Positions 5,582 to 64,000 are shown, counted from the first letter of the stretch. The stretch: DNA of 64,000 nucleotides from IMGVR_UViG_3300030107_006644:1-64000, one strand, 5' to 3'. The notes: generated from the letters alone by a model not told the origin. Numbers and translations are program-made.

Positions 5582-5919
5582 ATTATAAAGAAGAGCGCCC
5601 ATGGGGAACATTCGAAAATCTATTAGAAGAGAAATATTGCAAGGTAAAACAGATAGTTGTAAAGCCCGGTCATAGACTTAGCTATCAATACCACCATAGG
5701 CGTTCTGAACACTGGGTAATTGTGTGCGGTCAAGCAGTAGTGACTTTAAATGGTGAACAATCTTATCTTACCCCGGGCGAGCATATACATATACCCGTTA
5801 CAAGCAAACATCGAATTCACAACATAGGTAAAAGTGATTTGGTTTTTGTAGAGGTGCAGTGTGGTGATAACTTTGATGAGGAAGATATAGTGAGATTAGA
5901 AGATGATTATTCGCGGTAG
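5578..5919 (+). CDS. Stand-alone type II mannose-6-phosphate isomerase (cupin, ManC C-terminal-like)
   Basis: RPWG, LSYQYHHRRSEHWV, HRI.N, VEVQ.G, EEDIVRLEDDY motifs. Confidence 0.88.
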   Translation: MNYKEERPWGTFENLLEEKYCKVKQIVVKPGHRLSYQYHHRRSEHWVIVCGQAVVTLNGEQSYLTPGEHIHIPVTSKHRIHNIGKSDLVFVEVQCGDNFDEEDIVRLEDDYSR

Positions 5920-5925
5920 GCAGAA

Positions 5926-8507: not shown

Positions 8508-8513
8508 GTAATT

Positions 8514-23520: not shown

Positions 23521-24240
23521 ATGTCCGATACGGTAAAAATTCCAGCTACAGTTGCCGGCCGTTTGATGGCCGCCGGCGGCTACTCTCCGGATGTAATGCC
23601 ATACGTGCAGGATAACACGACAGCTTTTTCGCAAAACCTTACTGTAAGAAGTTTAGCACTGCAGAACTTCATCAATTTACTTCTGTGTGTGCCGGGTGAA
23701 AGGATAATGGATATTAATTTTGGAGTTGGTTTAAAAACATACTTGTTTCGAATGAATGATATGACAACAAGGGAAGACTTAAGGAGCAATATTTTATCAC
23801 AAACAAGCACTTATTTGCCCTATATTACAATTAACGATATGCAAATAACCACACCAGAAGGTGAGGCAAACGCGATACATCTGGAGATTGTGTTTACAAT
23901 AACAACAACTGGCGAATCTATGTATCTTATAATTAAGGATGGAGCAGCTACACTTCTCTCTTCGCAATTGCTCACAACGGACGAGGCCGGCCGAGTCTGT
24001 TCTAGCGAAAAGGTCGCAGCTTCTATTGGTGTTGATCCTGATTCGGACAAAATGTATGTTTGGGATCCCGTGGAAGCTCAAGCAATATACGAATCGTGCG
24101 AAGAAATGGGATATAGTTCTAGTGAAGGGGAGTCTGGCACCACGGGAATTCCAATATCGGACGGATACGAGGTGGTTGTTGATCTCGAAACCGTTAGAGA
24201 GCACCTCGAAGAAATTCTGGGAGAAGGAGTAGAACCATGA
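23521..24240 (+). CDS. Baseplate wedge protein gp25/GpW-like with C-terminal extension
   Basis: NFINLLLCVPGERIMDINFGVGLKTYLF...YLPYITI signature; GAGAGG RBS. Confidence 0.85.
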   Translation: MSDTVKIPATVAGRLMAAGGYSPDVMPYVQDNTTAFSQNLTVRSLALQNFINLLLCVPGERIMDINFGVGLKTYLFRMNDMTTREDLRSNILSQTSTYLPYITINDMQITTPEGEANAIHLEIVFTITTTGESMYLIIKDGAATLLSSQLLTTDEAGRVCSSEKVAASIGVDPDSDKMYVWDPVEAQAIYESCEEMGYSSSEGESGTTGIPISDGYEVVVDLETVREHLEEILGEGVEP

Positions 24241-51209: not shown

Positions 51210-52142
51210 ATGATGAAAAAATTAAAAATTATTGAGCAGGTTTTAGGACAGTCAAGAAAGGTGAATGACGAGCAATTGTTCTTTTGCCCATACTGCTCTC
51301 ATCCTAAAAGAAAGCTCTCGGTAAACGTAGAGAAGAATGTTTTCAAATGTTGGGTTTGCGATTCGCATGGCCGAGACATTAGAAGGATGATTCGCAAATT
51401 TGGCACAATCAGCCAGCGAGAGGCTTGGGACGAGCTTACAAACCGCGTAGATATAACGGACTTTTCCAGCATTTTCGATGAGAAGCTTGAGGAACCCGAA
51501 GCCGTGACTGGGTTGCCGCAAGAGTTTAGATCCTTAGCAAACAAATCCACTCCGATTAGTGCGCTTCATGCAATACGGTATTTGCGGGAAAGAGATATCA
51601 CAAAAGAAGATATAGTTTTTTGGAAGATCGGTTATTGTAATAGTGGTGAGTATGGAGAGCGTATCGTAATACCCAGTTTTAATAACTCTGGCTATGTAAA
51701 CTATTTTGTAGCCAGAAGTTATACAAAGTATCAGGCAAGATACAAGAATCCGCCAGTATCAAGGGATATCTGTTTTAATGAGCTTTATATCGACTGGGAT
51801 AAAGACTTGGTTATCACGGAAGGGATCTTTGATGCGATTAAAGCTGGCCCAAACTCCGTACCGCTTTTAGGCTCAACACTTAGAGAAAATTCAAAGTTGT
51901 TCCAAAAAATTGTTACTCGCGATACTCCCGTATATATGGCTCTAGACGCAGACGCCAGCAAGAAAGAGAGTAGGATTATTAACCTTTTTCTTAAATACGA
52001 TATTGAAGTTTATAAGATAGACACATCAGGGGTCGACGATGTTGGTTCCATGACTCGCGAGCAGTTCCAGAGGAGAAAAGAAAAAGCAACCTTTATCCCT
52101 TCAGGCGACTATTTATTGAAGACGGCGTTATATAATTTATAA
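51210..52142 (+). CDS. DNA primase (zinc finger + TOPRIM)
   Basis: CPYC..H..LSVN..FKCWVC zinc finger, YL.ER, RIVIP, YKNP, ITEGIFD, LDAD, DVG. Confidence 0.9.
   Translation: MMKKLKIIEQVLGQSRKVNDEQLFFCPYCSHPKRKLSVNVEKNVFKCWVCDSHGRDIRRMIRKFGTISQREAWDELTNRVDITDFSSIFDEKLEEPEAVTGLPQEFRSLANKSTPISALHAIRYLRERDITKEDIVFWKIGYCNSGEYGERIVIPSFNNSGYVNYFVARSYTKYQARYKNPPVSRDICFNELYIDWDKDLVITEGIFDAIKAGPNSVPLLGSTLRENSKLFQKIVTRDTPVYMALDADASKKESRIINLFLKYDIEVYKIDTSGVDDVGSMTREQFQRRKEKATFIPSGDYLLKTALYNL
52109..52116 (+). promoter_or_regulatory. Candidate late-promoter motif CTATTTAT
   Basis: Near the primase 3' end, upstream of the leader-tagged gene cassette; identical octamer at 23483 and 59415. Confidence 0.35.
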
Positions 52143-52162
52143 TCGGCTACTGGAGGCTTGTT

Positions 52163-54220
52163 ATGTCAAGGTGGGGCAAACCAACCAAAAACAAAAGAAG
52201 AACTGATCCCCGATATCACTTAGAAGAAACTGTCGAAAAAGATGACAAGCGGGAGATTTTGCAAGAGCAACCCTCCGGCCTGCGAACTATGGGCAATGTA
52301 GACTCTTCTCAGTTTGTCGGTCCAACTCCGGGCGATCTGATTGATTTCGCCCAGCCACTTGCCGGCCCAGCCAATATGCAAACCGGAGAAGGCATGGCGT
52401 CTCAATACTTATACAATCCGATTTATGATATTGTGAGCAGTACGCCATTCGCCGGGCGCCAACACGCCCTCCAACGCCAAGCAGCCGCAGCGGCCGCCTT
52501 AGATCCTACAAACGTGCCCCCTATGCCAAGAAACGTGAGGACACATCCACCTCCAGCCCAAGCCCCTAACCGCTGGTATTCATCCAACAAGCTGCTCAAC
52601 CCCCGCTCAACGGGCCAAGCCATTGGCAGCCGTCTTCTGAGATGGGGAGGTCCAGCTGTTGGATACCTGCCTCAAGGCGTGATGTTGGCCGGCCAGTATC
52701 AAGGGATGGGAGCCGCAGAGGATGAAATGCATCGACTCGGCCTGCAGAGTAGTTTTATACAACACGGCGGCTATCAGCGACAAATTGATGCGAACCGTGA
52801 CGCACTCGCCGGCATGCCAACTGATACCGAAGAACAGAGGCAAGCGAGGGCAAGACAGGCCGGAATCGTCCAACAACAGCAGAATGCGCTCGACGCAAGA
52901 AATGCAGCAATTGAAGATCTGGCGTGGACCGGTGCATCTGTCGGCGCCACCGGCTACGGTATCGGCGTAGGTCAAGGCCCGCTTGCTAGGGGTGGCCAAA
53001 CAATTGCCAATCGAGGCTATTCTACAGCACTCGGCCGCGTATTTTCGGGAGGAGGAAATCCAGCCTTCAGAACCGGCGCCCAGCGCGCTCTGCCATGGCT
53101 CGGCCGCGCTGCTACCCGTGTAGCACTCCCGCTTGCTGCTGCCCAAGGCTTTGTAGATCTTGGACGAGCCGGCTACGAAGCCGGCGCCGCTTATGGAGCA
53201 CCTTGGGGAGACAGCAGCGAAGCCATCGGCTGGACAAATCCGGGGCAAATGGCCCAAGAAACAATTCTCCACAGCACCCTCGGCGGTGAGGATATATTAG
53301 ATAGAGATCCACGAGACGATAATGAAGCCCTTGCTAGAATTCGAGCCGCAGAAACAGAAGCCGGCCTTAGCACCGGCGACCACATTCGAAATTGGCGTCA
53401 ACACCAGTCAGAATATGAGCGCGATCACGGCGCCATGCCTGAGTACGAATTTGTGCCCGATCCGGAGACGCAAAGGCTTGTTCCTACTGCCGATTCCCGC
53501 AGAGCCCGCCACGATGCGCAGAGAAATGTCTATGCCAGACAGCACGGCTTTAATGATTGGGAGCAGGCAGCTGAAAGCGACACGGCGATGGGTAGACAAA
53601 TTAGGAGAACACGCGCAAGAGCTTCTCAGATGCGAGGCGAGGATCATGATTCTGGAGCACTCACGGGTGATATTGGATTTGATCGCGCCGGCGAACTCGG
53701 CTCACTAAACTTAGATGAGGGCAAAAGTAGAAAGGAGCAAAGATTGCTAATGGAAAATCAATATTCTAAAATGCAAAGATTAGCGGGGATCAAAAAGAAA
53801 AAGCCTCGCCTTAATGAGGATTTGCTAGGCCTTGTCTTATTCGCAGCTGCAAACGCTGCAGCTATCTATGCTGCGGTTGGCCGCCACAATTTGGCCATGG
53901 GCGAACTCGGTGCCGGTGAACCCCCATTGGCAAAAAAATGGGAAGAAACAAAGAGAGAAGCAGAGCAGAGTAATGCTCCTCTGCACGATATGCTTAAGGG
54001 AATCGAAGATATGGCAGAAAGTCAATCCGGACAGCTAACTCCACAACAGTATCAGCAGTTAGCTCAAGCTTTCGGAAATGATCCGGTTCTTATCGACATG
54101 CTAGATCAGTTTGATCGCGAGCAACTATATCCCGATGAAGCTAAACAATTGATTGATCAGATGGATCGTTACGTGCGATCTAAAATACAAGAATTACCCG
54201 ATGAGGGAGAAGAGGTTTAA
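52163..54220 (+). CDS. Hypothetical Gly/Ala/Gln-rich protein, candidate internal virion (ejected) protein
   Basis: GGAGG RBS; RRTDPRYHLEE and ILQE near N-terminus; internal KMQRLAGI and RLNE; hydrophobic Gly/Ala stretches. Confidence 0.6.
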   Translation: MSRWGKPTKNKRRTDPRYHLEETVEKDDKREILQEQPSGLRTMGNVDSSQFVGPTPGDLIDFAQPLAGPANMQTGEGMASQYLYNPIYDIVSSTPFAGRQHALQRQAAAAAALDPTNVPPMPRNVRTHPPPAQAPNRWYSSNKLLNPRSTGQAIGSRLLRWGGPAVGYLPQGVMLAGQYQGMGAAEDEMHRLGLQSSFIQHGGYQRQIDANRDALAGMPTDTEEQRQARARQAGIVQQQQNALDARNAAIEDLAWTGASVGATGYGIGVGQGPLARGGQTIANRGYSTALGRVFSGGGNPAFRTGAQRALPWLGRAATRVALPLAAAQGFVDLGRAGYEAGAAYGAPWGDSSEAIGWTNPGQMAQETILHSTLGGEDILDRDPRDDNEALARIRAAETEAGLSTGDHIRNWRQHQSEYERDHGAMPEYEFVPDPETQRLVPTADSRRARHDAQRNVYARQHGFNDWEQAAESDTAMGRQIRRTRARASQMRGEDHDSGALTGDIGFDRAGELGSLNLDEGKSRKEQRLLMENQYSKMQRLAGIKKKKPRLNEDLLGLVLFAAANAAAIYAAVGRHNLAMGELGAGEPPLAKKWEETKREAEQSNAPLHDMLKGIEDMAESQSGQLTPQQYQQLAQAFGNDPVLIDMLDQFDREQLYPDEAKQLIDQMDRYVRSKIQELPDEGEEV

Positions 54221-54221
54221 T

Positions 54222-55265
54222 ATGAGTGATTTTGATTTTATAGACCATTATGCGGAAGAAGAAGAAGCGGTAAATGAAAATATGCTGCCTGAAAACAGCG
54301 TTGTTTCTTCTTTGAATTGCGCAGTAATTGGTGTGGGAGGTGGAGGCGGAAAAATGGCCAAAGCCTTCCTTGAATTAGGGTTTAACAAGACCTTATTGGT
54401 GAATACTACATCCAAGGACATTCCTGAAGGAGTTGACGAACAACATGTTGTGTTGATTCCTGAAGCAGATGGTATTGGAAAGGATGTCGATCTTGGAAAA
54501 GCCGTATTTGAGGCAAATAGTGCCGTTGTCGAAGACGCCCTTAGAACGAAGCTGGGCCGCGTTGACTGGTTGTTTGTATGTGCAGGCGGAGGAGGAGGTA
54601 CAGGAAGCGCTGTGGCGTCCTTAAACGATGTTTTTGACCGCTATTTAAGCTCGGTACAAGCTGAAGGCCGCGTAATCTATGTGGTTTCTTGGCCAACGGC
54701 TCAAGAATGTCTCAACCCGACAATTAGCAAGAACGCATTATCTTTGGTGAATGATGTTTCGGAGCTTCCGCACGTTGTTTTGGATAATGAGAGGCAAGTT
54801 AAACTTCTGAGAGGAAAGGTTGGCATGCTAGGTATGTATCCTTTGGCCAATTCGTCTTTTGCAAAATTGTTAAGTCAAGTATTAAAGCTTTCATCCGAAC
54901 AATCTCCAATCCAATCGTTTGATTCAAAGGATCTGGAAAGGTGTCTCCGAACTGAAAAGAGAATGTTCGTGGGTTCGACCATGATTCAGAATCCAGCAAC
55001 ACCTAACTTGGGCTCGATGATTCTTCAGAATTGCCTGAAGCGTTCCCCGTGCCCTGCGCCACAAGGAAAACCATCGACTGGCTCGCTATTACTAGTTGTA
55101 AATTCGCAGATGGCAGGCGATCCTGAGATCAGCGCGCACCTAGACGCAGCAATTTCTTACGTCGGAGGAAGAACAGATACACTTTTTTCTGGAGTTTATA
55201 TAAATGAAAGTGTCCCCGGGCTAGTTGCGATACTACTTATGAATGGGTTGGAGAGTGGTCAATAA
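54222..55265 (+). CDS. Tubulin/FtsZ-family GTPase (PhuZ/TubZ/CetZ-like)
   Basis: VIGVGGGGGK (T1), VNT..D, GIGKD..G, AGGGGGTGS tubulin signature, LDNE, SFDSKDL (T7-like). Start moved from 54153 to ATG 54222 (GAGG RBS). Confidence 0.9.
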   Translation: MSDFDFIDHYAEEEEAVNENMLPENSVVSSLNCAVIGVGGGGGKMAKAFLELGFNKTLLVNTTSKDIPEGVDEQHVVLIPEADGIGKDVDLGKAVFEANSAVVEDALRTKLGRVDWLFVCAGGGGGTGSAVASLNDVFDRYLSSVQAEGRVIYVVSWPTAQECLNPTISKNALSLVNDVSELPHVVLDNERQVKLLRGKVGMLGMYPLANSSFAKLLSQVLKLSSEQSPIQSFDSKDLERCLRTEKRMFVGSTMIQNPATPNLGSMILQNCLKRSPCPAPQGKPSTGSLLLVVNSQMAGDPEISAHLDAAISYVGGRTDTLFSGVYINESVPGLVAILLMNGLESGQ

Positions 55266-55266
55266 A

Positions 55267-55623
55267 ATGAAAGAGAAAACGCTTGAACAAATAATCAGAG
55301 AAGAGCTTGGTAAATTCACAGAAGCAATCAGGTTTGGCTCTAGAGGAGAAGCTGAGGCTTATGGAGGCGACCAAACTGTCGTCCATGAGCCGGGAGACGA
55401 CGAGGGTGGATCCGCTGATCCGTCCGCTGGTCTAAGTGTTGATCGCAGTCCTGCAGAAGAGGCTGTCGAAGACAAGATCTATGATTTAGTTGATGCAATC
55501 AAGCAAATGGGTAAATCAAACCCAGACATGACAGACACCTATATTTACTTATTTAGAGCCCTGCAGCAAGCGGGAGTTAACGTTAGCAGTGTTGCAGTGT
55601 TAGCAGAAGGGAGAAGAAAATGA
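55267..55623 (+). CDS. Leader-tagged small protein (MKEKTLEQIIREEL)
   Basis: Shared N-terminal motif with downstream genes; start moved from 55243 to 55267. Confidence 0.7.
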   Translation: MKEKTLEQIIREELGKFTEAIRFGSRGEAEAYGGDQTVVHEPGDDEGGSADPSAGLSVDRSPAEEAVEDKIYDLVDAIKQMGKSNPDMTDTYIYLFRALQQAGVNVSSVAVLAEGRRK

Positions 55624-55724
55624 AGAAAGTATTACACAAATTAGCAAACCTATTTAATAGTGACCATTGTTGTTGCTGCTGCGGTTGTTGTAGTTGCGAC
55701 AACTGTTCGGGAGCATGTAAATGA
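55620..55724 (+). CDS. 34-aa Cys-rich micropeptide (metallothionein-like), not in ORF track
   Basis: MKKVLHKLANLFNSDHCCCCCGCCSCDNCSGACK*; ATGA overlaps at both ends fill the gap exactly; purine-rich RBS upstream. Confidence 0.75.
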   Translation: MKKVLHKLANLFNSDHCCCCCGCCSCDNCSGACK

Positions 55725-57235
55725 AATTAACCAGAAAACAACTTGAACAACAGGTTAGAGAGGCTCTTAAAAAGAGAACTCTTAATGAGAACGAACCACC
55801 CGCTGGGGAAGAGTCCGGTGCAGGATCCAGCCTCTTCGGTGATGGCAATACCTTCTTGGGCATGGAGCCCGATGAAGTGGCCACTGACATGGGCACCCCG
55901 GATGCCACCTTTAATGTTCAGGGCCTAGGGCAAGAACAGGGAGAATTCTTCACCGGCGCCACAGAGCCCAATCCCGCCGGCGGAGGATCATCGGGATTCG
56001 TCCGGACCTTCGATGATCGCGACCTAGCCGCGCAAGCACCAGCCGGTAATCTTAATCAACGCGCAAGAGCAGCCAGACGGTCTGGCGAATTGGTCAGTTA
56101 TGACGAACTGCCGATCAGCACTTCCGCGTATCGAACAGATCCGGAAACTGGCGATATTCGCGTTACGCGCGGGAAGTTCAGGGGCGCCCGTGTTGATCCT
56201 GCCACGATGCCGGGTAATGTGGCCCCGACTGTGCGAGTGACACCACAGGCGCAGGCCAGAAGAGATGCGGCTCGCCGCATTGCCCACGGTAGTTATCAGA
56301 CGCAACAAGGTTCTGGCCGCATTAATGAGGATAATGAGGATGACTACATGTCGCAAAAGACCTTTCCGGCGTTCTCGGCCCTCCCGGGAGAACAAAAACT
56401 CCCCGGCGAGAGCATTGTGGATCCACAAACAGGCGCCACATGGAGCACCGGGAATATCGGAGGAATCGAGCAGTGGATCGGCGGTGAAGGAAACACGGAC
56501 GAGGAAAAGGCTCAGTGGGAAAGGGAGAGGACATCAGATGCATCAGACGAGGCACTCTATCCGACCTCGCCCGCAAAAGTAGAAGATTCGAAACCAAGAC
56601 GCACCAGCCTCGCAGACAAGATTATGAACCCAGATCCCTTGGGCCACTTGCAAGAACGAAGAGAGGCCATGCAACGCAGACGAAGCCGCGTATCTCTTCC
56701 TCCTAAAACTCCCGCTATGCAGGCTATATACGAGAGGGCTGCAATGGGAGATCATCGCCTTAGATTCATGTTTGAGCATGCAGTCGCCGGAAACGCAAAG
56801 GCGCAGCAGTTTCTTAACGCTTTGGCTGAAACTCTTACCAAGAGTCAAATTCTAAAGGAGCAAGAAGCAGCACCTGAACCACCTCACGATTCCGGCCCTC
56901 CAAAAACCGACGAAGGTCTCAATATTGACGCGCTGGTTGAAGAATTGGAGTCGGTGGATGAGGGCATTGGCGCGTGGGCAATGAATAAAGCCGGCCTGAT
57001 TAGCGACGAGGATTACGCAAATCTTACCGCCGAATGGGGCAGACAACGCGCCGCCAAGCGAACGTTAGGAACCAGCGGGTCTGATATAAAGCTGGGCACT
57101 GGCAGAAAAAGCCAGATGGATCAAATCGACTGGAACCCGAAGCGAAAAGACGAGCTTAACGAATCCCAAGATCCCCTTAAGAGAATGCGAGATCTTGCAT
57201 TAAAATCATACGGGAGCTACAAGTATGAAGATTGA
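55721..57235 (+). CDS. Leader-tagged low-complexity protein (504 aa)
   Basis: MKLTRKQLEQQVREAL..LNE N-terminus; internal RINE, ILKE, LNE sites; C-terminal RMRDLAL. Confidence 0.7.
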   Translation: MKLTRKQLEQQVREALKKRTLNENEPPAGEESGAGSSLFGDGNTFLGMEPDEVATDMGTPDATFNVQGLGQEQGEFFTGATEPNPAGGGSSGFVRTFDDRDLAAQAPAGNLNQRARAARRSGELVSYDELPISTSAYRTDPETGDIRVTRGKFRGARVDPATMPGNVAPTVRVTPQAQARRDAARRIAHGSYQTQQGSGRINEDNEDDYMSQKTFPAFSALPGEQKLPGESIVDPQTGATWSTGNIGGIEQWIGGEGNTDEEKAQWERERTSDASDEALYPTSPAKVEDSKPRRTSLADKIMNPDPLGHLQERREAMQRRRSRVSLPPKTPAMQAIYERAAMGDHRLRFMFEHAVAGNAKAQQFLNALAETLTKSQILKEQEAAPEPPHDSGPPKTDEGLNIDALVEELESVDEGIGAWAMNKAGLISDEDYANLTAEWGRQRAAKRTLGTSGSDIKLGTGRKSQMDQIDWNPKRKDELNESQDPLKRMRDLALKSYGSYKYED

Positions 57236-57485
57236 TAGGAAGACATTGATGCGGATCCTTAGAGAAGAGCTATCTACCCACTATTCGCAAGATCTTAAAG
57301 AAGAGACGGATGCGAGCGGCATGTCAAAGAAAATGCACGATGCCTTAGAAGATGCTTCTGGTACAGCAAACATGGACACCGACATGGATACATCAGGCCT
57401 TCAATCAGACGGCGTTAGTTTGGATGAAGGACTCACAAGATTAATTCAATTAGCTGGCATAAGGAGCGCAAAAGATGAAGGTTAG
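57225..57485 (+). CDS. Leader-tagged small protein
   Basis: MKIDRKTLMRILREEL..LKEE; C-terminal LDE..RLIQLAGI; GGAG RBS. Confidence 0.7.
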   Translation: MKIDRKTLMRILREELSTHYSQDLKEETDASGMSKKMHDALEDASGTANMDTDMDTSGLQSDGVSLDEGLTRLIQLAGIRSAKDEG

Positions 57486-57879
57486 CAAAAAGCAATTTAA
57501 AGGTTTAGTTGCCGAAGCGTTAAAGACCGTTTTGGAGATTGAAGAGCCGCCATTTAGAACGGGGCTGAGCAAGGCCGACTGGGAAGGCCCGGGCGATCCC
57601 CGTGGTGCCGGCGCAGATCTTGATGTTTTCCCGGAAACTGAAGCTGAGAAGCTGGGAGATCGGATCGCCGCAGCTATGGAAGCTGGAATTAGAAATGTTT
57701 TAATGAGCCACTTGGGCGACCAAGAAGGCTTAACAGTATACGATAAGTATTTAGCCGATGTCGATGATGATATTCTGAGTATTGCTATGCACATGCGCGA
57801 TGCCGCGATGGACATGGTAGGAGAACCAGAAGGAATCACTGGCGACGAAGAAGACGAAGATTTACAGGAGGAATGGTAA
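57475..57879 (+). CDS. Leader-tagged acidic small protein
   Basis: MKVSKKQFKGLVAEAL; AAGGAG RBS. Confidence 0.7.
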   Translation: MKVSKKQFKGLVAEALKTVLEIEEPPFRTGLSKADWEGPGDPRGAGADLDVFPETEAEKLGDRIAAAMEAGIRNVLMSHLGDQEGLTVYDKYLADVDDDILSIAMHMRDAAMDMVGEPEGITGDEEDEDLQEEW

Positions 57880-58247
57880 TGCAAATAACCATCAAAAGAC
57901 TAAAAGAGATCATTAAAGAAGAGGTGGATTATTTCAACCAACTTCTCACAGAGCAGGGTCCGCCCCCCGGCGGCGGTATGCCGCCCGGAGCACCCCCTGT
58001 TGGAGGCCCTCCCCCCGGGATGGGTCCACCCCCCGGAGGCCCGCCTCCCGGCATGGGAGCCGCACCCGGAGGTCCGCCTCCCGGTGGAATGCCCCCCGGA
58101 GGCCCACCCTCCGGACCACCCGGCGGAGATCCCATTCAGGGTGCTATCGCAGCCCTTGAGGGTGGTGACGCCGCTTCAGCCCTTCAGATCCTTAAGTCGT
58201 TAGCTGGCCCACCCGCCGGCGGCGGTATGCCACCCGGCATGGGATAA
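57879..58247 (+). CDS. Leader-tagged Pro/Gly/Met-rich protein
   Basis: MQITIKRLKEIIKEEV..LLTE then GPPPGGGMPPG repeats; AGGAGG RBS, TAATG overlap (track start 57873). Confidence 0.7.
   Translation: MQITIKRLKEIIKEEVDYFNQLLTEQGPPPGGGMPPGAPPVGGPPPGMGPPPGGPPPGMGAAPGGPPPGGMPPGGPPSGPPGGDPIQGAIAALEGGDAASALQILKSLAGPPAGGGMPPGMG
57957..58244 (+). repeat. Low-complexity GC-rich coding repeat (GPPPG/MPPG units)
   Basis: About ten imperfect (G/M)PP(P)G units with varied codons. Confidence 0.8.
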
Positions 58248-58256
58248 ACATAGAGC

Positions 58257-58886
58257 ATGAAGCTCTTATTTGAAAACTGGCGTAAATTCCTAAAAGAAGA
58301 AAAATGGGAAGATTTCGACACCAATAAGGGCGAGTGGACTAATCTTTCTGCTAGCGATATTGAAGCTGCTAAAGATCCGGCAAATGTAGATATTACAGAC
58401 GAATTGCTGGCCCTAATAGACAATGCTTATAAAGATATTGGTGGAAATTTCGACTTCAGAAACCCCGGCGATATCCCCGGAGATGCTGATTTTTGGCTAG
58501 CGGTTGATTTGGACGACGATCCAGAGCCCGATGCAGTCAGGGTGGGCAAAACTAAGCCTGCAGGGCTTAAATTATCTGCTTCTGGTCATGATGGCTCTAG
58601 ACCGGCAATTGAGGCATTCAAGCAAAAGACCTCAGAATTATTAAGTACGCCCGGGCACTATGGTGAGATGTCAAAAGCCGCCGCACATGTGATGATTAAA
58701 TATTTTCAAGTGCCATTTGTCGCAGATCCAGAAATCGTGCAGAAAGTGCTGGGGCCCTCTAAACCTATTAAGTGGCTCGGACCACATCCAGAGGGTAAAT
58801 ATCCCGGATATGATGGTTGGTATACGAGAACCATTTCAGGTCACGAAGATGAAATGAAAATTATGCTGGGTACCCCCAACGCATAA
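58257..58886 (+). CDS. Leader-tagged protein (MKLLFENWRKFLKEE) with globular body
   Basis: Second leader type shared with 60194; body has LIDNAYKDIGG, SGHDG, GWYTR. Confidence 0.75.
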   Translation: MKLLFENWRKFLKEEKWEDFDTNKGEWTNLSASDIEAAKDPANVDITDELLALIDNAYKDIGGNFDFRNPGDIPGDADFWLAVDLDDDPEPDAVRVGKTKPAGLKLSASGHDGSRPAIEAFKQKTSELLSTPGHYGEMSKAAAHVMIKYFQVPFVADPEIVQKVLGPSKPIKWLGPHPEGKYPGYDGWYTRTISGHEDEMKIMLGTPNA

Positions 58887-58891
58887 TTTAC

Positions 58892-58920
58892 TTGCTTTCT
58901 CTATCCAAGTAGGTTATACT
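58892..58920 (+). promoter_or_regulatory. sigma70-type promoter (TTGCTT-N17-TATACT)
   Basis: Intergenic, 17-nt spacer, followed by AGGAG RBS and ATG 58939. Confidence 0.6.
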
Positions 58921-58938
58921 AATGGTATAGGAGTTAAC

Positions 58939-59400
58939 ATGAAAATAATGTTTTTGCACGGCTTAGAATCTAAACCCGGTGGTTCAAAGCCAACATATCT
59001 ATCATATCACGGGCACACAGTTCTAAACCCTTCACTGCCGAAAGACAGTTGGGATGACAGTGTAAAAATTGCCAGAGCCTTATTCGAACAGGAGCTACCA
59101 GATGTGGTTGTGGGCTCCTCAAGGGGAGGAGCAGTGGCAATAGCGGCTCGCTTGTCTGTGCCTAAGCTCGTGTTGGTCGCACCAGCTTGGGCCAAATATT
59201 GTCCGTGGGGAACAATTCCTTCTACGGCGACAATTTTACACTCTAAAAGCGATGATATTGTTCCGTACTCTGATAGCGAGCTTTTAGCCCACACGTTTGG
59301 CGCCGAACTAATTGAGACCGGCGCCGACCATCGCATGAATGATGAGTTCGCATTAGAAAAAATGCTTGAGGTAATAAATAGAGGTCAAAATTTGTCATAA
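58939..59400 (+). CDS. Small alpha/beta hydrolase (YqiA/UPF0227-like esterase)
   Basis: FLHGLES, nucleophile elbow GSSRGG, LVAPA, HS..DDIV, DH catalytic His. Confidence 0.85.
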   Translation: MKIMFLHGLESKPGGSKPTYLSYHGHTVLNPSLPKDSWDDSVKIARALFEQELPDVVVGSSRGGAVAIAARLSVPKLVLVAPAWAKYCPWGTIPSTATILHSKSDDIVPYSDSELLAHTFGAELIETGADHRMNDEFALEKMLEVINRGQNLS

Positions 59401-59414
59401 AGGTTTATTTCTAT

Positions 59415-59422
59415 CTATTTAT
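59415..59422 (+). promoter_or_regulatory. Candidate late-promoter motif CTATTTAT
   Basis: Intergenic, just upstream of the AAGGTGAGG RBS of 59439, where the leader-tagged cassette resumes. Confidence 0.45.
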
Positions 59423-59438
59423 AAGGTGAGGAATAAAA

Positions 59439-60197
59439 ATGCCGTTTGAATCGGAAAAGCAGCGAAGATGGATGCATGCCAATGAGCCAGAAATGGCCAA
59501 AAGGTGGGAAAAGAAGGAAGAAGCTCTCAAGCAAGAGGGGGGTGGACCAACTGCTGCCACTATTCGCATGCCGGCCGAAAAAATTACCGCTACAGGATCC
59601 GGCACTCCAGATTGGGAACAGGCATTTTTAGAGTACGAGTCTGCAGAACAGGATACGCGCCAATTTCCCGACCCCGGGCTTTTGCAACGCCTAGAAGATG
59701 TTGTTGGTGAAGACTGGCGAGAAGATTACGATGAGTGGAAAGAGCATCCTCACCGCGCTGAGCCGCTGAAACCAAGCCAGCCCGGCCCATTAATATCAGA
59801 GGAGGACAGTGGGATGAAAATTAAAGGTTTAGAACTTAAGCAAATGGTAAAAGAGGCCCTTTTGAGTGAAATGGGTTGCGGAGGCGGTCACCATGGCCAC
59901 GGCCATGAACAACCCTCTATGGGAGGAATGAATGATCTCCTTGCACTTGGCGGAGGCCAAAGTCAAACGCCTCTTATTATTATTCAGACATCTGAAGAAG
60001 AGCAGGAAGGACCAGCGGTAACTCACCCAACTCACATTAGGCACAAGCAGCAAGCACCAGAAGTAAGCGGCCTTGAACAACTTATTCCGATGCTCCTTCA
60101 GCTTGAAGGGCAGGTAGTGTCCTTTTCAAGCAGAGAGTTGGAATCGCACGTTAAGCGCAGTTTAAAAAGGATCTTAAGAGAGAGAAAACGCAGATGA
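59439..60197 (+). CDS. Hypothetical composite protein with internal leader motif and His-rich tract
   Basis: MPFESEKQRRWMHANEPE N-terminus; in-frame MKIKGLELKQMVKEALLSE at 59814 with its own AGGAGG; CGGGHHGHGHE. Confidence 0.7.
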   Translation: MPFESEKQRRWMHANEPEMAKRWEKKEEALKQEGGGPTAATIRMPAEKITATGSGTPDWEQAFLEYESAEQDTRQFPDPGLLQRLEDVVGEDWREDYDEWKEHPHRAEPLKPSQPGPLISEEDSGMKIKGLELKQMVKEALLSEMGCGGGHHGHGHEQPSMGGMNDLLALGGGQSQTPLIIIQTSEEEQEGPAVTHPTHIRHKQQAPEVSGLEQLIPMLLQLEGQVVSFSSRELESHVKRSLKRILRERKRR

Positions 60198-60835
60198 AGT
60201 TGTTGCTTGAAAAGTGGAAGCAGTACGCAGAAGCAGTGCGTGATGGGTTTACAATGGGTAGCCAAGCCGGCAGTATACCCGCTTCTACTGGAATGGGCAT
60301 CATGAAGAAGGAAGATGACGAGGATGATAAAATAGAAGAAGGCTGGGAAGATTATGTCACCGATATAGCCATGGCCGCCCCTGATATCGCAGGCTCAGTT
60401 TACGACAGTTATATTGCCAAACCAATCAATACTGCTTCCCGCCATTACACCGGTCAAAATGTCGCGCCCGTATATGCCGGCGGTGCTAGGGAACCGATAG
60501 AGGCTGCCTACGAAGGCGGACTTGACTTGGCCACTCAAGCGGCCACAGCCCCCCTGCGCGCGGCCAGTACAGTGACGGACTGGGCGAGCAATCTTGTGAA
60601 CGAACATAACGATGAAATGTACGATCTAACAAAAGGTGAACGACCTCCTCCTCATTCTACAGGCGATGTTACCAGAAAGGATCCCGATGCGGACACAGAA
60701 GCAAGCATGACTCCCAACTATGAAGTTGAGGTCGAGCAGCTTGTTTTCGATATGTTGATGTCCGGAATGTCCGAGCAAGAAATCATGAGTATGATTGAAG
60801 AATATGTGCAAGACGCCGCATCATATGCAAAATAA
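60194..60835 (+). CDS. Leader-tagged acidic protein (MKLLLEKWKQY)
   Basis: Leader resembles 58257; internal IEE and VNE sites; ATGA overlap. Confidence 0.7.
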   Translation: MKLLLEKWKQYAEAVRDGFTMGSQAGSIPASTGMGIMKKEDDEDDKIEEGWEDYVTDIAMAAPDIAGSVYDSYIAKPINTASRHYTGQNVAPVYAGGAREPIEAAYEGGLDLATQAATAPLRAASTVTDWASNLVNEHNDEMYDLTKGERPPPHSTGDVTRKDPDADTEASMTPNYEVEVEQLVFDMLMSGMSEQEIMSMIEEYVQDAASYAK

Positions 60836-61096: not shown

Positions 61097-64000
61097 ATGA
61101 TGAAGTTTGCGCATATTGCGGATACGCATATTAAAAATTTAAAATACCACCACGAATATAAGGAAGTGTTCGCACAACTGTATGAAACACTAAGAGACGA
61201 ACAGGTTGATTGCATCGTTCATTGTGGCGATATTGCACACACAAAAACACAAATCTCACCAGAGTTTGTAGAAATGTGTTCTGACTTTTTTCGAAACTTG
61301 GCAACCATCGCGCCGACATATATTATTCTAGGCAATCACGATGGCAATCTAAAGAACAGCAGTCGACAGGATGCTCTGACTCCTATCGCAGACGCTTTGG
61401 ACTTACAAAACTTACATCTGTTGAAAGATTCAGGCGAGGCTGTTTTAAATGACAAATTCTGCTTAAATGTTTTGTCGGTTTTTGATGAGGAGAATTGGTG
61501 CGATCCCACTGATGAGGACAAGATCAACATCGCCCTCTATCATGGTTCGATCTCGGGAGTAAAAACAGACCTTGGCTGGGTTATGGAGCATGGAGAACAT
61601 GATATTAGTATTTTTGATAATTTTGACTTTGCTTTTCTTGGAGATATCCACAAGACAAATCAAAAGTTAGACACAGAAGGTCGGATCCGATATTCCGGCA
61701 GCACGATTCAGCAGAATCATGGTGAAACAAACGACAAAGGGCTGTTGCTGTGGGATATCCAAGATAAAGATAATTTTAGTTGCAAGCACATTGCATTTAA
61801 AAACCCGAAGCCATTTGTTACTATTGAATTAACACCAAAGGGTAGGATCCCGAAAGGAACAGCCGTGCCCAAGGGCGCCCGCCTGCGTTTGGTATCCAAC
61901 AATAACCTTCCTCTAACTCGCTTGAAGAGAGCTGTTGACATTGCAAAGCATAGATTTAAGCCGGAAGCAATCACTTTCTTAAATCGAGCTTTGGGACAGA
62001 GAGGAAGTGTTGATTCGTTAACAAACACGATTATTAAGGAAAATCTTAGAGACACCGCTGTGCAAGAAAGGCTTATGCGCGAGTATCTTAAGGATTACGA
62101 GATTGATGATACTATGATGGAGCGAGTGTTGACGCTGAACTCAAAGTACAACCAGATGGCCGAGCAAGAAGAGGAAGTTAGCAGAAATATCAACTGGAAG
62201 CTAAATTCGGTAAAGTTTGATAATCTGTTTAATTATGGCGAAGGCAATTCTATTGACTTTACAAACCTTGCTGGCGTAGTTGGTATTTTTGGGAAGAATT
62301 ATAGCGGTAAAAGCAGTATTATCGACTCTATTTTATACACTATGTTCAACTCAACGTCAAAGAATGAGAGAAAGAACTTAAACGTTATCAATCAAAACAA
62401 GGAGTTTTGTGCCGGCACTGTTGATATTTCGATTGGCGAGCGTTCTTACGAAATTAGCAGAACTTCAGAAAAGTACGTCAAAAGGCTGAAGGGCGAAGAG
62501 ACCTTGGAGGCAAAAACCGACCTAAACTTTGAACAAAGAGATGCGGTCACCAACACCACACGCAGTTTGAATGGTCTTACGAGAATAGAAACAGACAAGC
62601 AAATACGAAAGATGTTTGGAACACTTGACGATTTCTTGCTGACCTCTATGGCTAGCCAACTTGACTCGCTAACCTTCATCAATGAGGGCTCAACGAGGCG
62701 AAAAGAGATTTTGGCCAAGTTCTTAGATTTGGAGATATTCGAAAAGAAATACAGGCTAGCCAAGGAGGATGCTAGTGACCTTCGCGGAGCACTCAAAAGG
62801 CTCGAAAATAGAGAATTTGAGCAAGATATCGCTGCAGCAGCGCTTGAGTTGTGTGAGAGCGAAGATAAGATTGAAAAGCACAAGAGTCGGTGTGAAAAGT
62901 ATCAAGTATCGATAGACAAGATAGGCGAAAAGATACAGGATTTAGAGGAGAAAGTGGGCTCTGTGCCGGTTGAACTGATCGATGTGGCGAACACTAGAGC
63001 CGAGATCGAAAAGCTCACAGTACAAGAGCAGTCACTGCAGTCGAAACTTGAGGAAGAGAGTAAGGATTTGAAGATTCGAACGGAACTTTACGAGAAGATT
63101 ATTAACTTTCTGGACACCATGGATATCGAGGAGTTGAGAGAAAAGAAGGAAAAGGTAGAATCACTAAACTCTACAGTGCTTGAGGTTGAATCTATGCTTC
63201 AAAACATAGATCAAAAGGCAAAATTACTCGACGGAATCCCGTGTGGAGATACATATCCCACCTGTAAGTTTATCAGAGATGCCAATGTGGCAGTAGCTAA
63301 CCGCCACCACTCCGTAAAGGAGCTAAAAACAGCCCAAAGCCGACTTGAGGAGCTTGATAGTGTGACTGTTACCGATCACATAGGCAAGTATAACAGCGTA
63401 CTTCAGAGAAAAAACCAAGTTTCTACTGGAATTGCCGAACTTAACCTGTCTATTGAGCGAAATTCTAATACGCTAGAGAAAACTATAGACAAAATACAGG
63501 TTTTAAACGAAAAGGTGGAAGAATACAACAAAAACAAGGACACAATTGACAATTTGGAGGCAATGATGTCGAAATTGTCAAAGATGCGGAACAACGTTGT
63601 GTCCTATAGGGAACAGAAGGCGCAATGTGAGGAGAGTTTGACCTCGCTGTATGTTGAGCACGGCTCTTTAGAGCAAAAATTGCGCAACTTGGAGAGCCAA
63701 AAGCAAGAACTACAAGATTTGCATGAGCAATACTCGTCTTTTGACCTGTATATGCGTTGTATGCATTCTAATGGAATTGCATATGATATCATCAAGAGAA
63801 AACTTCCGATTATTAACGAAGAAATCGCCAAAACTTTGGCAAATATTGTCAACTTTAACGTTTACTTCGAGGATGATGGAAAAAGGCTCAATATCTTTAT
63901 TAAGCACCCCAAACACGATCCGCGACCTATTGGTATGGGCTCTGGTGCCGAGAAAACAATAGCAGCAATGGCTATCAGACTGGCCTTGTTGTCTATATCA
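61097..64000 (+). CDS. Fused SbcD-SbcC (Mre11-Rad50, T4 gp47-gp46-like) nuclease/ATPase, 3'-truncated by window end
   Basis: Manual translation: FAHIADTH, CGDIAH, LGNHD, LYHG, LGDIH, YSGS (phosphoesterase), then in the same frame GKNYSGKSS (Walker A), coiled coil, PCGDTYPTC, MGSGAEK signature; absent from ORF track because there is no stop in the window. Confidence 0.9.
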   Translation, partial: MMKFAHIADTHIKNLKYHHEYKEVFAQLYETLRDEQVDCIVHCGDIAHTKTQISPEFVEMCSDFFRNLATIAPTYIILGNHDGNLKNSSRQDALTPIADALDLQNLHLLKDSGEAVLNDKFCLNVLSVFDEENWCDPTDEDKINIALYHGSISGVKTDLGWVMEHGEHDISIFDNFDFAFLGDIHKTNQKLDTEGRIRYSGSTIQQNHGETNDKGLLLWDIQDKDNFSCKHIAFKNPKPFVTIELTPKGRIPKGTAVPKGARLRLVSNNNLPLTRLKRAVDIAKHRFKPEAITFLNRALGQRGSVDSLTNTIIKENLRDTAVQERLMREYLKDYEIDDTMMERVLTLNSKYNQMAEQEEEVSRNINWKLNSVKFDNLFNYGEGNSIDFTNLAGVVGIFGKNYSGKSSIIDSILYTMFNSTSKNERKNLNVINQNKEFCAGTVDISIGERSYEISRTSEKYVKRLKGEETLEAKTDLNFEQRDAVTNTTRSLNGLTRIETDKQIRKMFGTLDDFLLTSMASQLDSLTFINEGSTRRKEILAKFLDLEIFEKKYRLAKEDASDLRGALKRLENREFEQDIAAAALELCESEDKIEKHKSRCEKYQVSIDKIGEKIQDLEEKVGSVPVELIDVANTRAEIEKLTVQEQSLQSKLEEESKDLKIRTELYEKIINFLDTMDIEELREKKEKVESLNSTVLEVESMLQNIDQKAKLLDGIPCGDTYPTCKFIRDANVAVANRHHSVKELKTAQSRLEELDSVTVTDHIGKYNSVLQRKNQVSTGIAELNLSIERNSNTLEKTIDKIQVLNEKVEEYNKNKDTIDNLEAMMSKLSKMRNNVVSYREQKAQCEESLTSLYVEHGSLEQKLRNLESQKQELQDLHEQYSSFDLYMRCMHSNGIAYDIIKRKLPIINEEIAKTLANIVNFNVYFEDDGKRLNIFIKHPKHDPRPIGMGSGAEKTIAAMAIRLALLSIS

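What the first reader, a model, noticed from the sequence alone, without database searches (positions are those of the whole stretch)
52163..60835. Cassette of unrelated proteins sharing short N-terminal leaders and L/I-x-E sites: candidate capsid-targeting cargo system
Seen: leader type A in MKEKTLEQIIREEL, MKLTRKQLEQQVREAL, MKIDRKTLMRILREEL, MKVSKKQFKGLVAEAL, MQITIKRLKEIIKEEV and internal MKIKGLELKQMVKEAL. Leader type B occurs in MKLLFENWRKFLKEE and MKLLLEKWKQY. A third motif recurs internally (KMQRLAGI, RLIQLAGI, RMRDLAL). The leaders are usually followed by LNE/LKE/LTE/LSE, after which the sequences are unrelated and often disordered. Known: T4 internal proteins use a ~10-aa N-terminal capsid-targeting sequence removed by the prohead protease after L/I-x-E. 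Inference: a modular address-tag system that loads a variable payload into the head for injection or scaffolding, with more than one tag class. It may be usable for protein packaging.
Basis: partly seen in the sequence, partly recalled or inferred. Interest (0 to 1): 0.8.

Follow-up and report, generated by a model that had tools for sequence, protein, structure and literature searches.

The report
Shared leader peptides on phage head-cassette proteins
A large marine T4-like phage carries a fast-changing block of genes whose otherwise unrelated proteins all begin with one of two short shared leader peptides ending in a protease-type site; this is most likely an address tag for loading proteins into the forming capsid, like the T4 capsid-targeting sequence, but it has not been tested experimentally.

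Summary
Five consecutive genes (C-G) start with leader A (MKxTKxQLKQIIKEEL-like), J holds an internal copy, and H and K start with leader B (MKLLxENWRKFLxE). A model built only from relatives ranks the five N-terminal copies as the top five hits in the six-frame window.

The window is the first 64 kb of a 205.5-kb marine phage contig. Related loci carry 116 leader-A copies on the coding strand against 3 on the other, on 57 unrelated bodies. About 2,700 metagenomic proteins match the leader profile.

Both leaders end in [LIV]-x-Glu14. The same genome encodes a T4 gp21-type prohead protease with its catalytic His and Ser, a T4-type portal, and a Gp23 capsid protein whose T4 maturation site (E|A) is conserved. 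Leader A resembles the N-terminus of a conserved protein encoded next to the protease.

Best reading (about 0.55): a capsid-core targeting system like the T4 targeting sequence, probably with leader removal. The bodies are acidic and scaffold-like, not basic like T4 internal proteins, so injection is unsupported. Packaging, cleavage and timing are untested. I rate it a new variant of a known kind.

The parts
52163..54220 (+). Gene A, 685 aa, acidic and low-complexity. It has no leader A or B. It carries an internal copy of the scaffold C-terminal motif (SKMQRLAGI, 53765-53791), followed by KKKKPRLNE.
   Evidence: 19.4 bits, rank 1 of 70,682 window positions with a matrix from relatives' scaffold tails; no Pfam or PHROG hit and no homologue in 64 related loci.
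54222..55265 (+). Gene B, a divergent FtsZ/tubulin-family GTPase. It is the conserved anchor gene of the cassette and carries no leader.
   Evidence: Pfam Tubulin 1.5e-7 (32.3 bits, cut-off 33). PDB FtsZ chains 2e-6. GGGGGTGS signature visible; 54-79% identical in 64 other viral contigs.
55267..55623 (+). Gene C, 118 aa, with leader A (MKEKTLEQIIREEL, 55267-55308) and then an acidic body.
   Evidence: 11.8 bits with the independent model; pI 4.4 after the leader.
55721..57235 (+). Gene D, 504 aa, with leader A (55721-55768), then TLNE and a disordered acidic body. Its C-terminal RMRDLAL is not supported as a scaffold-tail motif.
   Evidence: (6.7 bits).
57225..57485 (+). Gene E, 86 aa, a 'mini-scaffold' architecture: leader A (57225-57272), an acidic linker, and a scaffold-like C-terminal motif TRLIQLAGI (57435-57461) seven residues from the stop.
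   Evidence: 11.6 bits; 7.8 bits, rank 5 of 70,682; the same leader-plus-tail architecture occurs in the L063/L066 proteins.
57475..57879 (+). Gene F, 134 aa, with leader A (57475-57522) and a very acidic body (net charge -23).
   Evidence: (5.1 bits).
57879..58247 (+). Gene G, 122 aa, with leader A (57879-57926) and then LLTEQGPPPG plus a Pro/Gly/Met-rich body. This resembles by eye the SLLEQGPPPG and P/G/M-rich segment of the phage's own scaffold.
   Evidence: 21.0 bits, best in the window; scaffold sequence; no BLAST similarity once composition is corrected, so the resemblance is local and compositional only.
58257..58886 (+). Gene H, 209 aa, with leader B (MKLLFENWRKFLKE, 58257-58298) on a conserved globular body of GNAT-acetyltransferase-like fold.
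   Evidence: 141 homologues; E14 invariant; a variable insertion directly after the leader; pLDDT 90.4, with leader residues 1-11 below 50; the top 50 PDB fold matches are all GNATs.
58939..59400 (+). Gene I, 153 aa, a small alpha/beta-hydrolase-like protein without a leader.
   Evidence: Abhydrolase_6 6.3e-6, UPF0227 3e-5.
59439..60197 (+). Gene J, 252 aa, with an internal leader-A copy at residue 126 (MKIKGLELKQMVKEAL, 59814-59861). The copy is preceded by GAGGAGGA, so this is either an internal start or a two-module protein.
   Evidence: (weak, 1.0 bit with the independent model); 76 of the top 120 metagenomic leader proteins have a second, internal leader.
60194..60835 (+). Gene K, 213 aa, with leader B (MKLLLEKWKQY, 60194-60235), a linker, then EEGWEDY as in the H family, and a very acidic body.
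   Evidence: 11.9 bits; repeat D3 links the H and K segment; pI 4.1.

Best explanation
The block 52.2-60.8 kb is a hypervariable cassette of a T4-like marine jumbo phage. Its proteins are addressed to the assembling prohead core.

Proposed addressing elements:
- Two N-terminal, 14-16-residue amphipathic leaders: A (MKxTKxQLKQIIKEEL) and B (MKLLxENWRKFLxE).
- In some proteins (A, E), a copy of the scaffold protein's own C-terminal peptide (R-[MW]-x-x-LAGI).

Proposed mechanism: these elements dock the proteins onto scaffold or core components while the Gp23 shell forms. The gp21-type serine protease then cuts after the [LIV]-x-Glu that ends each leader, and probably at the redundant sites just downstream.

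The bodies are mostly acidic disordered polypeptides. A few look like enzymes: a GNAT-like protein (H) and possibly the hydrolase I. Their fate is open. They may be expelled like scaffold fragments or kept and delivered with the DNA.

What is shown: the motifs, their statistics, their modularity, the protease, the T4-type head genes, the conserved capsid cleavage site and the gene neighbourhood. What is inferred: docking, cleavage, virion presence and timing.
For: 1. Leader A is a specific N-terminal module. An independent model recovers the window copies. There are 116 hits on the coding strand against 3 on the other, and 106 are N-terminal. It sits on 57 unrelated body clusters and on two different Pfam domains, DUF6321 and DUF5661.
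2. Leader B sits on a GNAT-like fold and on a P-loop protein (AAA_33 8.6e-5, below its cut-off).
3. Both leaders end in an invariant or near-invariant Glu14 preceded by L/I/V at position 12. T4 gp21 cuts after L/I-x-E, and T4 targeting sequences are 10-20-residue N-terminal propeptides (PMC9026906, PMC5694885).
4. The same contig encodes the head machinery:
   - TerL at 67.2 kb.
   - A T4-type portal at 68.8 kb (8e-79).
   - Peptidase_S77 at 72.6 kb (3.1e-30; 2.2e-19 to the T4 gp21 structure 5jbl; His81/Ser137 align with T4 His85/Ser140).
   - A Gp23 capsid protein at 87.6 kb (1.9e-71).
5. The T4 gp23 maturation site E65|A66 aligns with an invariant E|A preceded by [LIV]-x in this phage and three relatives.
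6. The third motif is the extreme C-terminus of the protein encoded directly upstream of the capsid gene in at least 21 relatives and in two cultured phages.
7. The conserved gene next to the protease (the p150 family, 33 members found by body-only BLAST) has an N-terminus that scores 5-16.6 bits with the leader-A model.
8. 80 loci were sampled only by a degenerate DNA pattern for the canonical leader. Of these, 46 also hold TerL, 34 the portal and 11 the protease within a few kb.
9. The cassette bodies have no homologue in 64 related loci, although the adjacent tubulin-like gene is 54-79% identical. This resembles the variable internal-protein loci of T-even phages (PMC3012670).
Against: There is no direct evidence of packaging or cleavage.
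- No virion proteome exists for any relative.
- No RNA runs were listed.
- The T4 late-promoter consensus is not enriched.
- The [LIV]-x-E periodicity (Glu at 10, 14, 18, 22) is what any amphipathic helix with an acidic stripe would give, so it is not independent proof of cleavage sites.
- The bodies are acidic (median pI 4.55), unlike the basic T4 internal proteins.
- In this genome the cassette lies next to primase and Mre11-Rad50 genes, about 6 kb upstream of TerL and about 12 kb from the protease.
- The scaffold assignment rests on position and composition only. It has no similarity to T4 gp22 and no Pfam or PHROG hit.
- A 53-kb contig with 13 or more consecutive leader genes could not be typed for its head genes.
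Confidence: 0.55

Rival explanations
1. The cassette proteins are accessory scaffold or core proteins and not cargo. The leader and the scaffold-like tail make them co-assemble with the scaffold as fillers or size and shape modulators of a large head. The protease degrades them and they are expelled before DNA enters. They are never delivered to the host. This shares the docking and cleavage steps of the best explanation but differs on fate and purpose.
For: - The bodies are acidic and disordered like the scaffold (pI 4.05-5.0 against 4.74 for the scaffold).
- E and A carry the scaffold's C-terminal motif.
- G shares LL(T)EQGPPPG and P/G/M-rich composition with the scaffold.
- Proteins with a leader-like N-terminus, an acidic middle and the scaffold tail recur in the L063/L066 clade.
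- In T4 the acidic core proteins gp22, gp67 and gp68 are cut to fragments and leave the head (PMC5694885).
Against: - Structural fillers would be expected to be conserved, yet no body is shared with any of 64 related loci.
- Leader B sits on a well-conserved GNAT-like enzyme fold and on a P-loop protein, which look like effectors and not fillers.
Confidence: 0.25
2. The leaders are docking helices for a hub that is not the capsid. One candidate is the adjacent FtsZ/tubulin-like protein, acting as a cytoskeletal adaptor. Another is a different replication or assembly compartment. The resemblance to protease sites is a by-product of helix periodicity.
For: - The cassette abuts the conserved tubulin-like gene in the window, and 25 of 80 leader-sampled loci contain it.
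- The [LIV]-x-E pattern has a 4-residue helical period.
- In this genome the neighbours are the primase and Mre11-Rad50 genes.
Against: - Leader genes co-occur more often with TerL (46 of 80) and the portal (34 of 80) than with the tubulin-like gene.
- In relatives the tubulin-like gene itself sits inside the head module.
- The scaffold-tail motif in A and E, and the leader-like N-terminus of the gene next to the protease, both point to the head.
Confidence: 0.1
3. This is one tandemly duplicated gene family whose disordered bodies have diverged beyond recognition. The 'leader' is simply the only constrained segment, for example an oligomerisation helix, and not a transferable address tag.
For: - The genes lie in tandem arrays of 2-13.
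- The bodies are short, disordered and fast-evolving.
- Failing to match by BLAST does not prove independent origin.
Against: - Leader A is fused to distinct Pfam domains (DUF6321, DUF5661).
- Leader B is fused to a GNAT-like fold and to a P-loop protein.
- Many proteins carry a second, internal leader before a different body.
- A variable-length insertion lies exactly at the leader-body junction in the H family.
Confidence: 0.07
4. The shared N-termini reflect a nucleotide-level feature, such as a translation-initiation enhancer or a recombination site, or they arise by chance among Lys/Glu-rich starts.
For: A+T-rich, Lys-rich starts are common in phage genes.
Against: - Codons differ synonymously between copies, and only one pair reaches 70% DNA identity over 27 nt.
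- About a quarter of internal copies lack the Met.
- The strand asymmetry is 116 to 3.
- The gap to background with an independent model is large.
Confidence: 0.03

Closest known systems
Bacteriophage T4 capsid targeting sequence (CTS) of internal proteins IPI-III and Alt, processed by the gp21 prohead protease
   Same: - A short N-terminal propeptide shared by otherwise unrelated proteins.
- It ends in hydrophobic-x-Glu, the gp21 site.
- A gp21-family protease and a T4-type portal, capsid protein and TerL are in the same genome.
- The loci vary strongly between related phages.
- The T4 facts come from PMC9026906, PMC5694885, PMC3012670 and PMC10229621.
   Different: - The leader is 14-16 residues with a different sequence, not the 10-residue T4 CTS.
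- There are two leader classes plus a scaffold-tail mimic.
- The bodies are acidic and disordered, not small and basic.
- Many proteins carry two leaders.
- No experimental evidence of packaging or cleavage exists.
Long propeptides of phiKZ/SPN3US giant-phage head and ejection proteins
   Same: - The propeptide regions hold several redundant protease sites ending in Glu.
- Many different proteins are loaded into a large head (PMC5694885, PMC9026906).
   Different: - Those propeptides are over 100 residues, and their protease motif is A/S/G-x-E.
- They belong to a different phage lineage.
- Here the leaders are short, and the head module is directly T4-like (Pfam Portal_T4, Gp23, Peptidase_S77).
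Scaffold C-terminal coat-binding peptides and encapsulin cargo-loading peptides (comparison from general knowledge)
   Same: A short conserved C-terminal peptide on a disordered or helical protein, here R-[MW]-x-x-LAGI-[KN], is copied onto other proteins (A, E, and the L063/L066 proteins). This suggests that the peptide alone confers binding to the shell or core.
   Different: Binding of this peptide to the Gp23 shell has not been tested. The motif has not been described, and the parent protein has no detectable similarity to T4 gp22.

Membership tests
T4-type CTS / internal-protein system | A short N-terminal propeptide shared by otherwise unrelated proteins. | tested here: met
   Leader A sits on 57 unrelated body clusters, and 106 of 116 copies are N-terminal. 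It is fused to DUF6321 and DUF5661. Leader B sits on a GNAT-like and a P-loop protein.
T4-type CTS / internal-protein system | Sequence relationship to the T4 CTS itself. | not tested
   T4 IP sequences were not fetched. By eye, and from memory of the T4 CTS, only the terminal hydrophobic-x-Glu is shared. The leaders here look like an independent solution.
T4-type CTS / internal-protein system | A gp21-family prohead protease is encoded by the same genome. | tested here: met
   Peptidase_S77 scores 3.1e-30 (105.6 bits, cut-off 27) at contig 72634-73254. It matches T4 gp21 structure 5jbl at 2.2e-19. His81/Ser137 align with T4 His85/Ser140.
T4-type CTS / internal-protein system | The propeptide ends in the protease recognition motif L/I-x-E. 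| tested here: met
   [LIV]-x-E14 occurs in 84-89% of leader-A proteins. E14 is invariant in leader B of the H family. The capsid E|A site aligned with T4 E65|A66 is invariant.
T4-type CTS / internal-protein system | [quoted passage not shown] | not testable with these tools
   This needs virion or prohead mass spectrometry or protease assays. No proteome of a relative was found.
T4-type CTS / internal-protein system | The cargo is small basic proteins that stay with the DNA and are ejected. | tested here: not met
   The bodies have a median pI of 4.55; 37 of 57 are below 5 and only 5 are above 9.
gp22-like scaffold paralogues | Shares the scaffold's conserved C-terminal peptide. | tested here: met
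   A scores 19.4 bits (rank 1) and E 7.8 bits (rank 5, near its stop); D is not supported.
gp22-like scaffold paralogues | Similarity to the scaffold along its length, or to T4 gp22. | tested here: not met
   G against the own scaffold gives E = 38. The own scaffold against T4 gp22 gives E = 17. Neither has a Pfam or PHROG hit.
GNAT acetyltransferase fold (protein H body) | The GNAT fold. | tested here: met
   The model has pLDDT 90.4. The top 50 Foldseek PDB matches are all GNATs, with probability 0.8-1.0 but only moderate TM-scores of 0.3-0.6. The acetyl-CoA-binding residues were not examined, and there is no Pfam hit.
Tubulin/FtsZ superfamily (protein B) | GTPase domain with the G-box signature. 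| tested here: inconclusive
   Pfam Tubulin scores 32.3 bits, just under the 33-bit cut-off. PDB FtsZ chains reach 2e-6 over the N-terminal 100 residues. A GGGGGTGS signature is visible.

The most novel reading that the evidence does not exclude
An abundant lineage of marine T4-like jumbo phages uses a modular, two-ended address code. It consists of two N-terminal leaders, with leader A derived from the N-terminus of a conserved core protein encoded next to the prohead protease, plus a copy of the scaffold's C-terminal peptide. With this code the phages load a rapidly exchanged repertoire of acidic disordered proteins and enzymes, such as a GNAT-like protein, into the capsid. Double-leader polyproteins would be cut into separate cargos. 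At least part of this cargo would be delivered into the host as takeover or anti-defence effectors.
Probability: 0.3. Interest if true: 0.8.

Novelty: new variant of a known kind. Interest (0 to 1): 0.62.

Why it matters
If the reading is correct, it extends the T4 principle of a short cleavable address tag on variable head proteins to a large, uncultured and abundant group of ocean phages. Leader A alone matches about 2,700 metagenomic proteins, and at least 120 viral contig stretches carry its canonical form.

It also suggests where such tags come from: they appear to be copies of the termini of conserved core and scaffold proteins. It would assign a role to hundreds of 'hypothetical' marine phage proteins at once. 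It points to candidate virion-borne effectors. It would offer new, sequence-defined tags for protein packaging in capsids other than T4.

It is not a new principle, and it rests on inference until a proteome or a cleavage assay is done.

Tried and rejected
- **Leader B as a mimic of the capsid propeptide (LLxKW...LLEG).** A leader-B model does not hit any Gp23 N-terminus. Rejected.
- **T4 late promoter TATAAATA.** There are 5 matches against 3.6 expected, none placed informatively. Sigma-70 and terminator scans are at background. Timing therefore cannot be inferred.
- **Searches of the phage collection.** The megablast, the tubulin tblastn and a 30-aa leader tblastn all found nothing.
- **Literature.** A full-text search for leader peptide strings gave 0 papers. 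No paper links a targeting sequence to marine T4-like phages.
- **Scaffold-tail motif.** A HMMER model was too short to separate signal from noise. It was replaced by a position matrix.
- **Family searches on cassette bodies and conserved head-module proteins.** Pfam and PHROGs gave nothing beyond the tubulin-like and hydrolase hits.
- **Atlas lead 'ART-PolyVal' for H.** The score was 0.65. The fold search gives GNAT instead, so the lead is not supported.
- **Similarity to T4 core proteins.** The own scaffold against T4 gp22, and p150 against T4 gp68, show no similarity.
- **Leader-A model on the own head module.** It gave only weak hits: the p167 C-terminus at 11.8, the p150 N-terminus at 6.8, and an internal scaffold site at 4.3.
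- **Typing the 53-kb contig that has 13 leader genes.** Two walks found only small ORFs and metabolic genes. The virus type is unresolved.
- **RNA runs for the cassette.** None was listed, and read laying was not used.


Full report
**What the window is.** All genes run on the + strand. The window holds a sugar and glycosyltransferase cluster, baseplate genes (gp25, gp6-like), two giant ORFs of 2,792 and 4,092 aa, a DnaG-type primase, and then the cassette. An exact-protein look-up shows the window is positions 1-64,000 of a 205,517-bp marine viral contig from Tara and JGI metagenomes (IMGVR_UViG_3300030107_006644). Window and contig coordinates are therefore the same. No record in the phage collection is close at the DNA level. 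By portal identity (about 39%), the nearest cultured phages are Microcystis phage Mel-JY01 and the Flavobacterium phages vB_FspM_immuto.

**The observation.** The cassette has eleven genes, A to K, between 52163 and 60835.
- C, D, E, F and G begin with leader A.
- J has one internal copy at residue 126.
- H and K begin with leader B.
- Each leader ATG has a GGAG-like site upstream, including the internal ATG in J.

A model made from the six window copies separates them from everything else in the window (20-30 bits against 9.6), but that test is circular. I therefore built a model from 50 leaders of related phages only. It ranks G, C, E, D and F as the five best hits of the six-frame window (21.0 to 5.1 bits, background up to about 3.3). 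J's internal copy reaches only 1.0 bit. The leaders are not DNA repeats, and codons differ synonymously.

**Relatives.** The tubulin-like gene B retrieved 64 other viral contigs at 54-79% identity. In these loci and the other loci scanned with them (about 1.1 Mb in all):
- Leader A scores at least 8 bits 116 times on the coding strand and 3 times on the other strand.
- 106 hits lie at ORF N-termini.
- There are 93 distinct proteins, falling into 57 body clusters with no BLAST similarity to one another.

The consensus is MK[IVL][TS]KxQLKQIIKEE[LIV], with M1 invariant and L8 and E14 at 90% or more.

A profile search of 5.8 billion proteins gave 2,709 hits at E of 1 or less, all metagenomic and unnamed. 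Of the top 120, 117 carry the leader at the N-terminus. 76 have a second, internal copy, and some of those lack the Met.

A 53-kb contig of unknown type has 13 or more consecutive genes starting MKITKRQLRRIIKEEKAKLLxE.

Leader B occurs at 18 or more distinct N-termini on different proteins, with H at 28.5 bits and K at 11.9.

**Link to head assembly.** Walking down the same contig gave the following.

| Feature | Contig position | Evidence |
|---|---|---|
| TerL | 67176 | Pfam Terminase_6N |
| T4-type portal | 68769 | Portal_T4, 8e-79 |
| Prohead protease | 72634-73254 | Peptidase_S77, 3.1e-30, 105.6 bits against a cut-off of 27 |
| p150 (150-aa protein) | 73251 | No family hit |
| Ribosomal protein S21 gene | 73705 | Pfam Ribosomal_S21 |
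| Fibre-like genes | 74406 to about 86200 | By sequence appearance |
| Acidic 415-aa protein | 86327-87574 | Directly upstream of the capsid gene |
| Gp23 capsid protein | 87606-89516 | Gp23, 1.9e-71 |

The protease matches the T4 gp21 structure 5jbl at 2.2e-19, and its His81 and Ser137 align with T4 His85 and Ser140.

T4 gp21 cuts after L/I-x-E, and T4 head proteins use 10-20-residue N-terminal propeptides as capsid-targeting sequences (PMC9026906, PMC5694885, PMC10229621). In an alignment with T4 gp23, the T4 maturation site E65|A66 falls on an invariant E|A preceded by L/V/I-x in this phage (LRE59|AS) and in three relatives. This suggests that the cleavage specificity is retained.

Both leaders end in that same pattern.
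- [LIV]-x-E14 occurs in 84-89% of leader-A proteins.
- E14 is invariant in leader B of the H family, and a variable-length insertion lies exactly after it.
- A second site at positions 18-30 is enriched: 72% against 22%, p = 1.6e-13.

The Glu positions 10, 14, 18 and 22 also fit a simple amphipathic helix, so this is compatible evidence and not independent evidence.

**The third motif.** The 330-560-aa acidic protein encoded just upstream of the capsid gene ends in [DE]R[WMF]xxLAGI[KN]. This holds in this phage (...DRMRMLAGIKK), in Mel-JY01, in immuto and in at least 21 metagenomic relatives.

I treat this protein as the scaffold because of its position and composition only. It has no BLAST similarity to T4 gp22 and no family hit.

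A matrix from these tails puts A's internal SKMQRLAGI first of 70,682 window positions (19.4 bits). E's C-terminal TRLIQLAGI comes fifth (7.8 bits), and D is not detected.

E therefore has leader A, an acidic linker and a scaffold-like tail. Larger proteins with the same plan occur in the L063/L066 clade. G shares LL(T)EQGPPPG and a Pro/Gly/Met-rich stretch with the scaffold, but only locally and by composition.

**Origin of leader A.** The gene next to the protease (the p150 family) has 33 members, found by BLAST with the body only. It begins MKKSELKQLIKPLVKECIxEVLLEEG or MAKLRKSQLKEIVKECLVEILSEG, and these N-termini score 5-16.6 bits with the leader-A model. Leader A thus resembles the N-terminus of a conserved head-module protein.

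**Neighbourhood statistics.** The 80 loci fetched by the leader DNA pattern alone were not selected on their neighbours. Of these, 68 carry a marker of this phage group within a few kb: 46 TerL, 34 the portal, 25 the tubulin-like gene and 11 the protease. They hold 244 leader copies in 652 kb. In relatives such as L009, L019, L037 and L079, leader genes directly flank TerL, the portal and the protease.

**Payload.** None of the bodies of A, C-G or I-K has a tblastn hit at 1e-5 in the 64 related loci. The cassette is therefore hypervariable next to a conserved anchor gene.

The bodies are acidic and low-complexity. The window proteins have pI 4.05-5.0 after the leader. The median over 57 clusters is 4.55, and the scaffold is 4.74.

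H is the exception. It belongs to a family with 141 homologues. Its model has pLDDT 90.4, with the leader itself unstructured. All top 50 PDB fold matches are GNAT acetyltransferases, at moderate TM-scores. A leader-B protein in L037 has a P-loop. Leader A is also found on DUF6321 and DUF5661 domains.

**Interpretation.** The most economical reading is a system that works like the T4 targeting sequence. Short leaders, and in some proteins a borrowed scaffold tail, dock variable proteins onto the prohead core. The gp21-type protease then removes the leaders.

I give this 0.55. The closest rival (0.25) keeps docking and cleavage but sees the proteins as expendable scaffold accessories and not as delivered cargo. 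The acidity and the scaffold-like pieces favour that rival, while the hypervariability and the enzyme-like bodies count against it. Docking to the tubulin-like protein (0.10), a single diverged paralogue family (0.07), and a nucleotide-level feature or chance (0.03) fit the data less well.

**Limits.** No step after translation is shown. I found no virion proteome of a relative. No RNA run was listed. Promoter consensus scans were uninformative. The contig with 13 leader genes could not be typed. The expectation that a leader motif would hit the capsid propeptide failed.

**Comparison and novelty.** T-even phages are known to carry diverse internal proteins that share only a conserved targeting sequence (PMC3012670, PMC9026906). 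This is the same kind of system in a distant T4-like lineage. It differs in four ways:
- The leaders are different and longer.
- There are two leader classes plus a scaffold-tail mimic.
- The bodies are acidic.
- Double-leader proteins are frequent.

No paper in the searched library contains the leader strings. I rate it a new variant of a known kind, with interest 0.62.

Noticed in passing
window 54222-55265: A divergent FtsZ/tubulin-family gene is conserved at 54-79% identity in 64 other marine viral contigs. In several relatives (L019, L040) it lies inside the head-morphogenesis module, between the capsid or portal genes and the tail genes. That is an unusual place for a phage tubulin.
   Followed up: partly
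contig 73705-73959 (L072:19036-19290), outside the window: A ribosomal protein S21 homologue (Pfam PF01165) lies directly after the protease and the p150 gene. The same arrangement occurs in Microcystis phage Mel-JY01 (RpsU) and in L079.
   Followed up: no
contig 66978-67166 (L072:12309-12497), outside the window: A 62-aa Hc1 histone-like protein (PF07432) is encoded immediately upstream of the large terminase gene.
   Followed up: no
window 15087-23465 and 27552-39830: Two giant ORFs of 2,792 and 4,092 aa flank the baseplate genes (gp25 23521-24240, gp6-like 24260-26068). The larger one has a Laminin_G_3/ConA-like lectin domain. They are probably fibre or host-recognition proteins.
   Followed up: no
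window 869-11464: A block of sugar-nucleotide and glycosyltransferase genes: GT1, GT2, an exostosin GT47-like gene, nucleotidyl transferase, GDP-mannose 4,6-dehydratase and an epimerase. This suggests glycan synthesis or modification by the phage.
   Followed up: no
L078:7030-11900 (contig ERZ26051151 ctg166145, 53 kb): Thirteen or more consecutive genes all start with MKITKRQLRRIIKEEKAKLLxE. This is the longest leader cassette seen. The virus type is unresolved; the neighbours are DUF2201, a MoxR-type AAA, an HD_4 gene and many 60-90-aa ORFs.
   Followed up: partly
proteins P0001-P0120 (metagenomic): 76 of the 120 best leader-profile hits carry two leaders, one N-terminal and one internal. 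The internal one is usually preceded by hydrophobic-x-E-x-K, and some lack the Met. This suggests two-module polyproteins or in-frame internal starts.
   Followed up: partly
window 52000-60000: G+C is 0.49-0.53 in the cassette against 0.40-0.45 in the flanks. This is probably a consequence of Gly/Pro/Ala/Glu/Asp-rich disordered coding. It also produces long spurious antisense ORFs, for example 52607-53272 and 57450-57884.
   Followed up: no
window 59439-59590: The N-terminus of J (MPFESEKQRRWMHANEPEMAKRWEKK) weakly matches PHROG 1375 (E 0.013). It looks like a separate small domain fused upstream of the internal leader.
   Followed up: no
window about 61100-64000, continuing to contig 64210: A 1,036-aa Mre11-Rad50 (SbcCD-like) fusion protein (Metallophos plus SMC_N/AAA_23) follows the cassette and runs over the window end.
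   Followed up: no
contig 65910-66413 (L072:11241-11744), outside the window: A 167-aa protein carries a leader-A-like segment at its C-terminus (KVSIEELKDLIREQL, 11.8 bits). A 74-aa protein in L019 does the same. The motif is therefore not strictly N-terminal.
   Followed up: no
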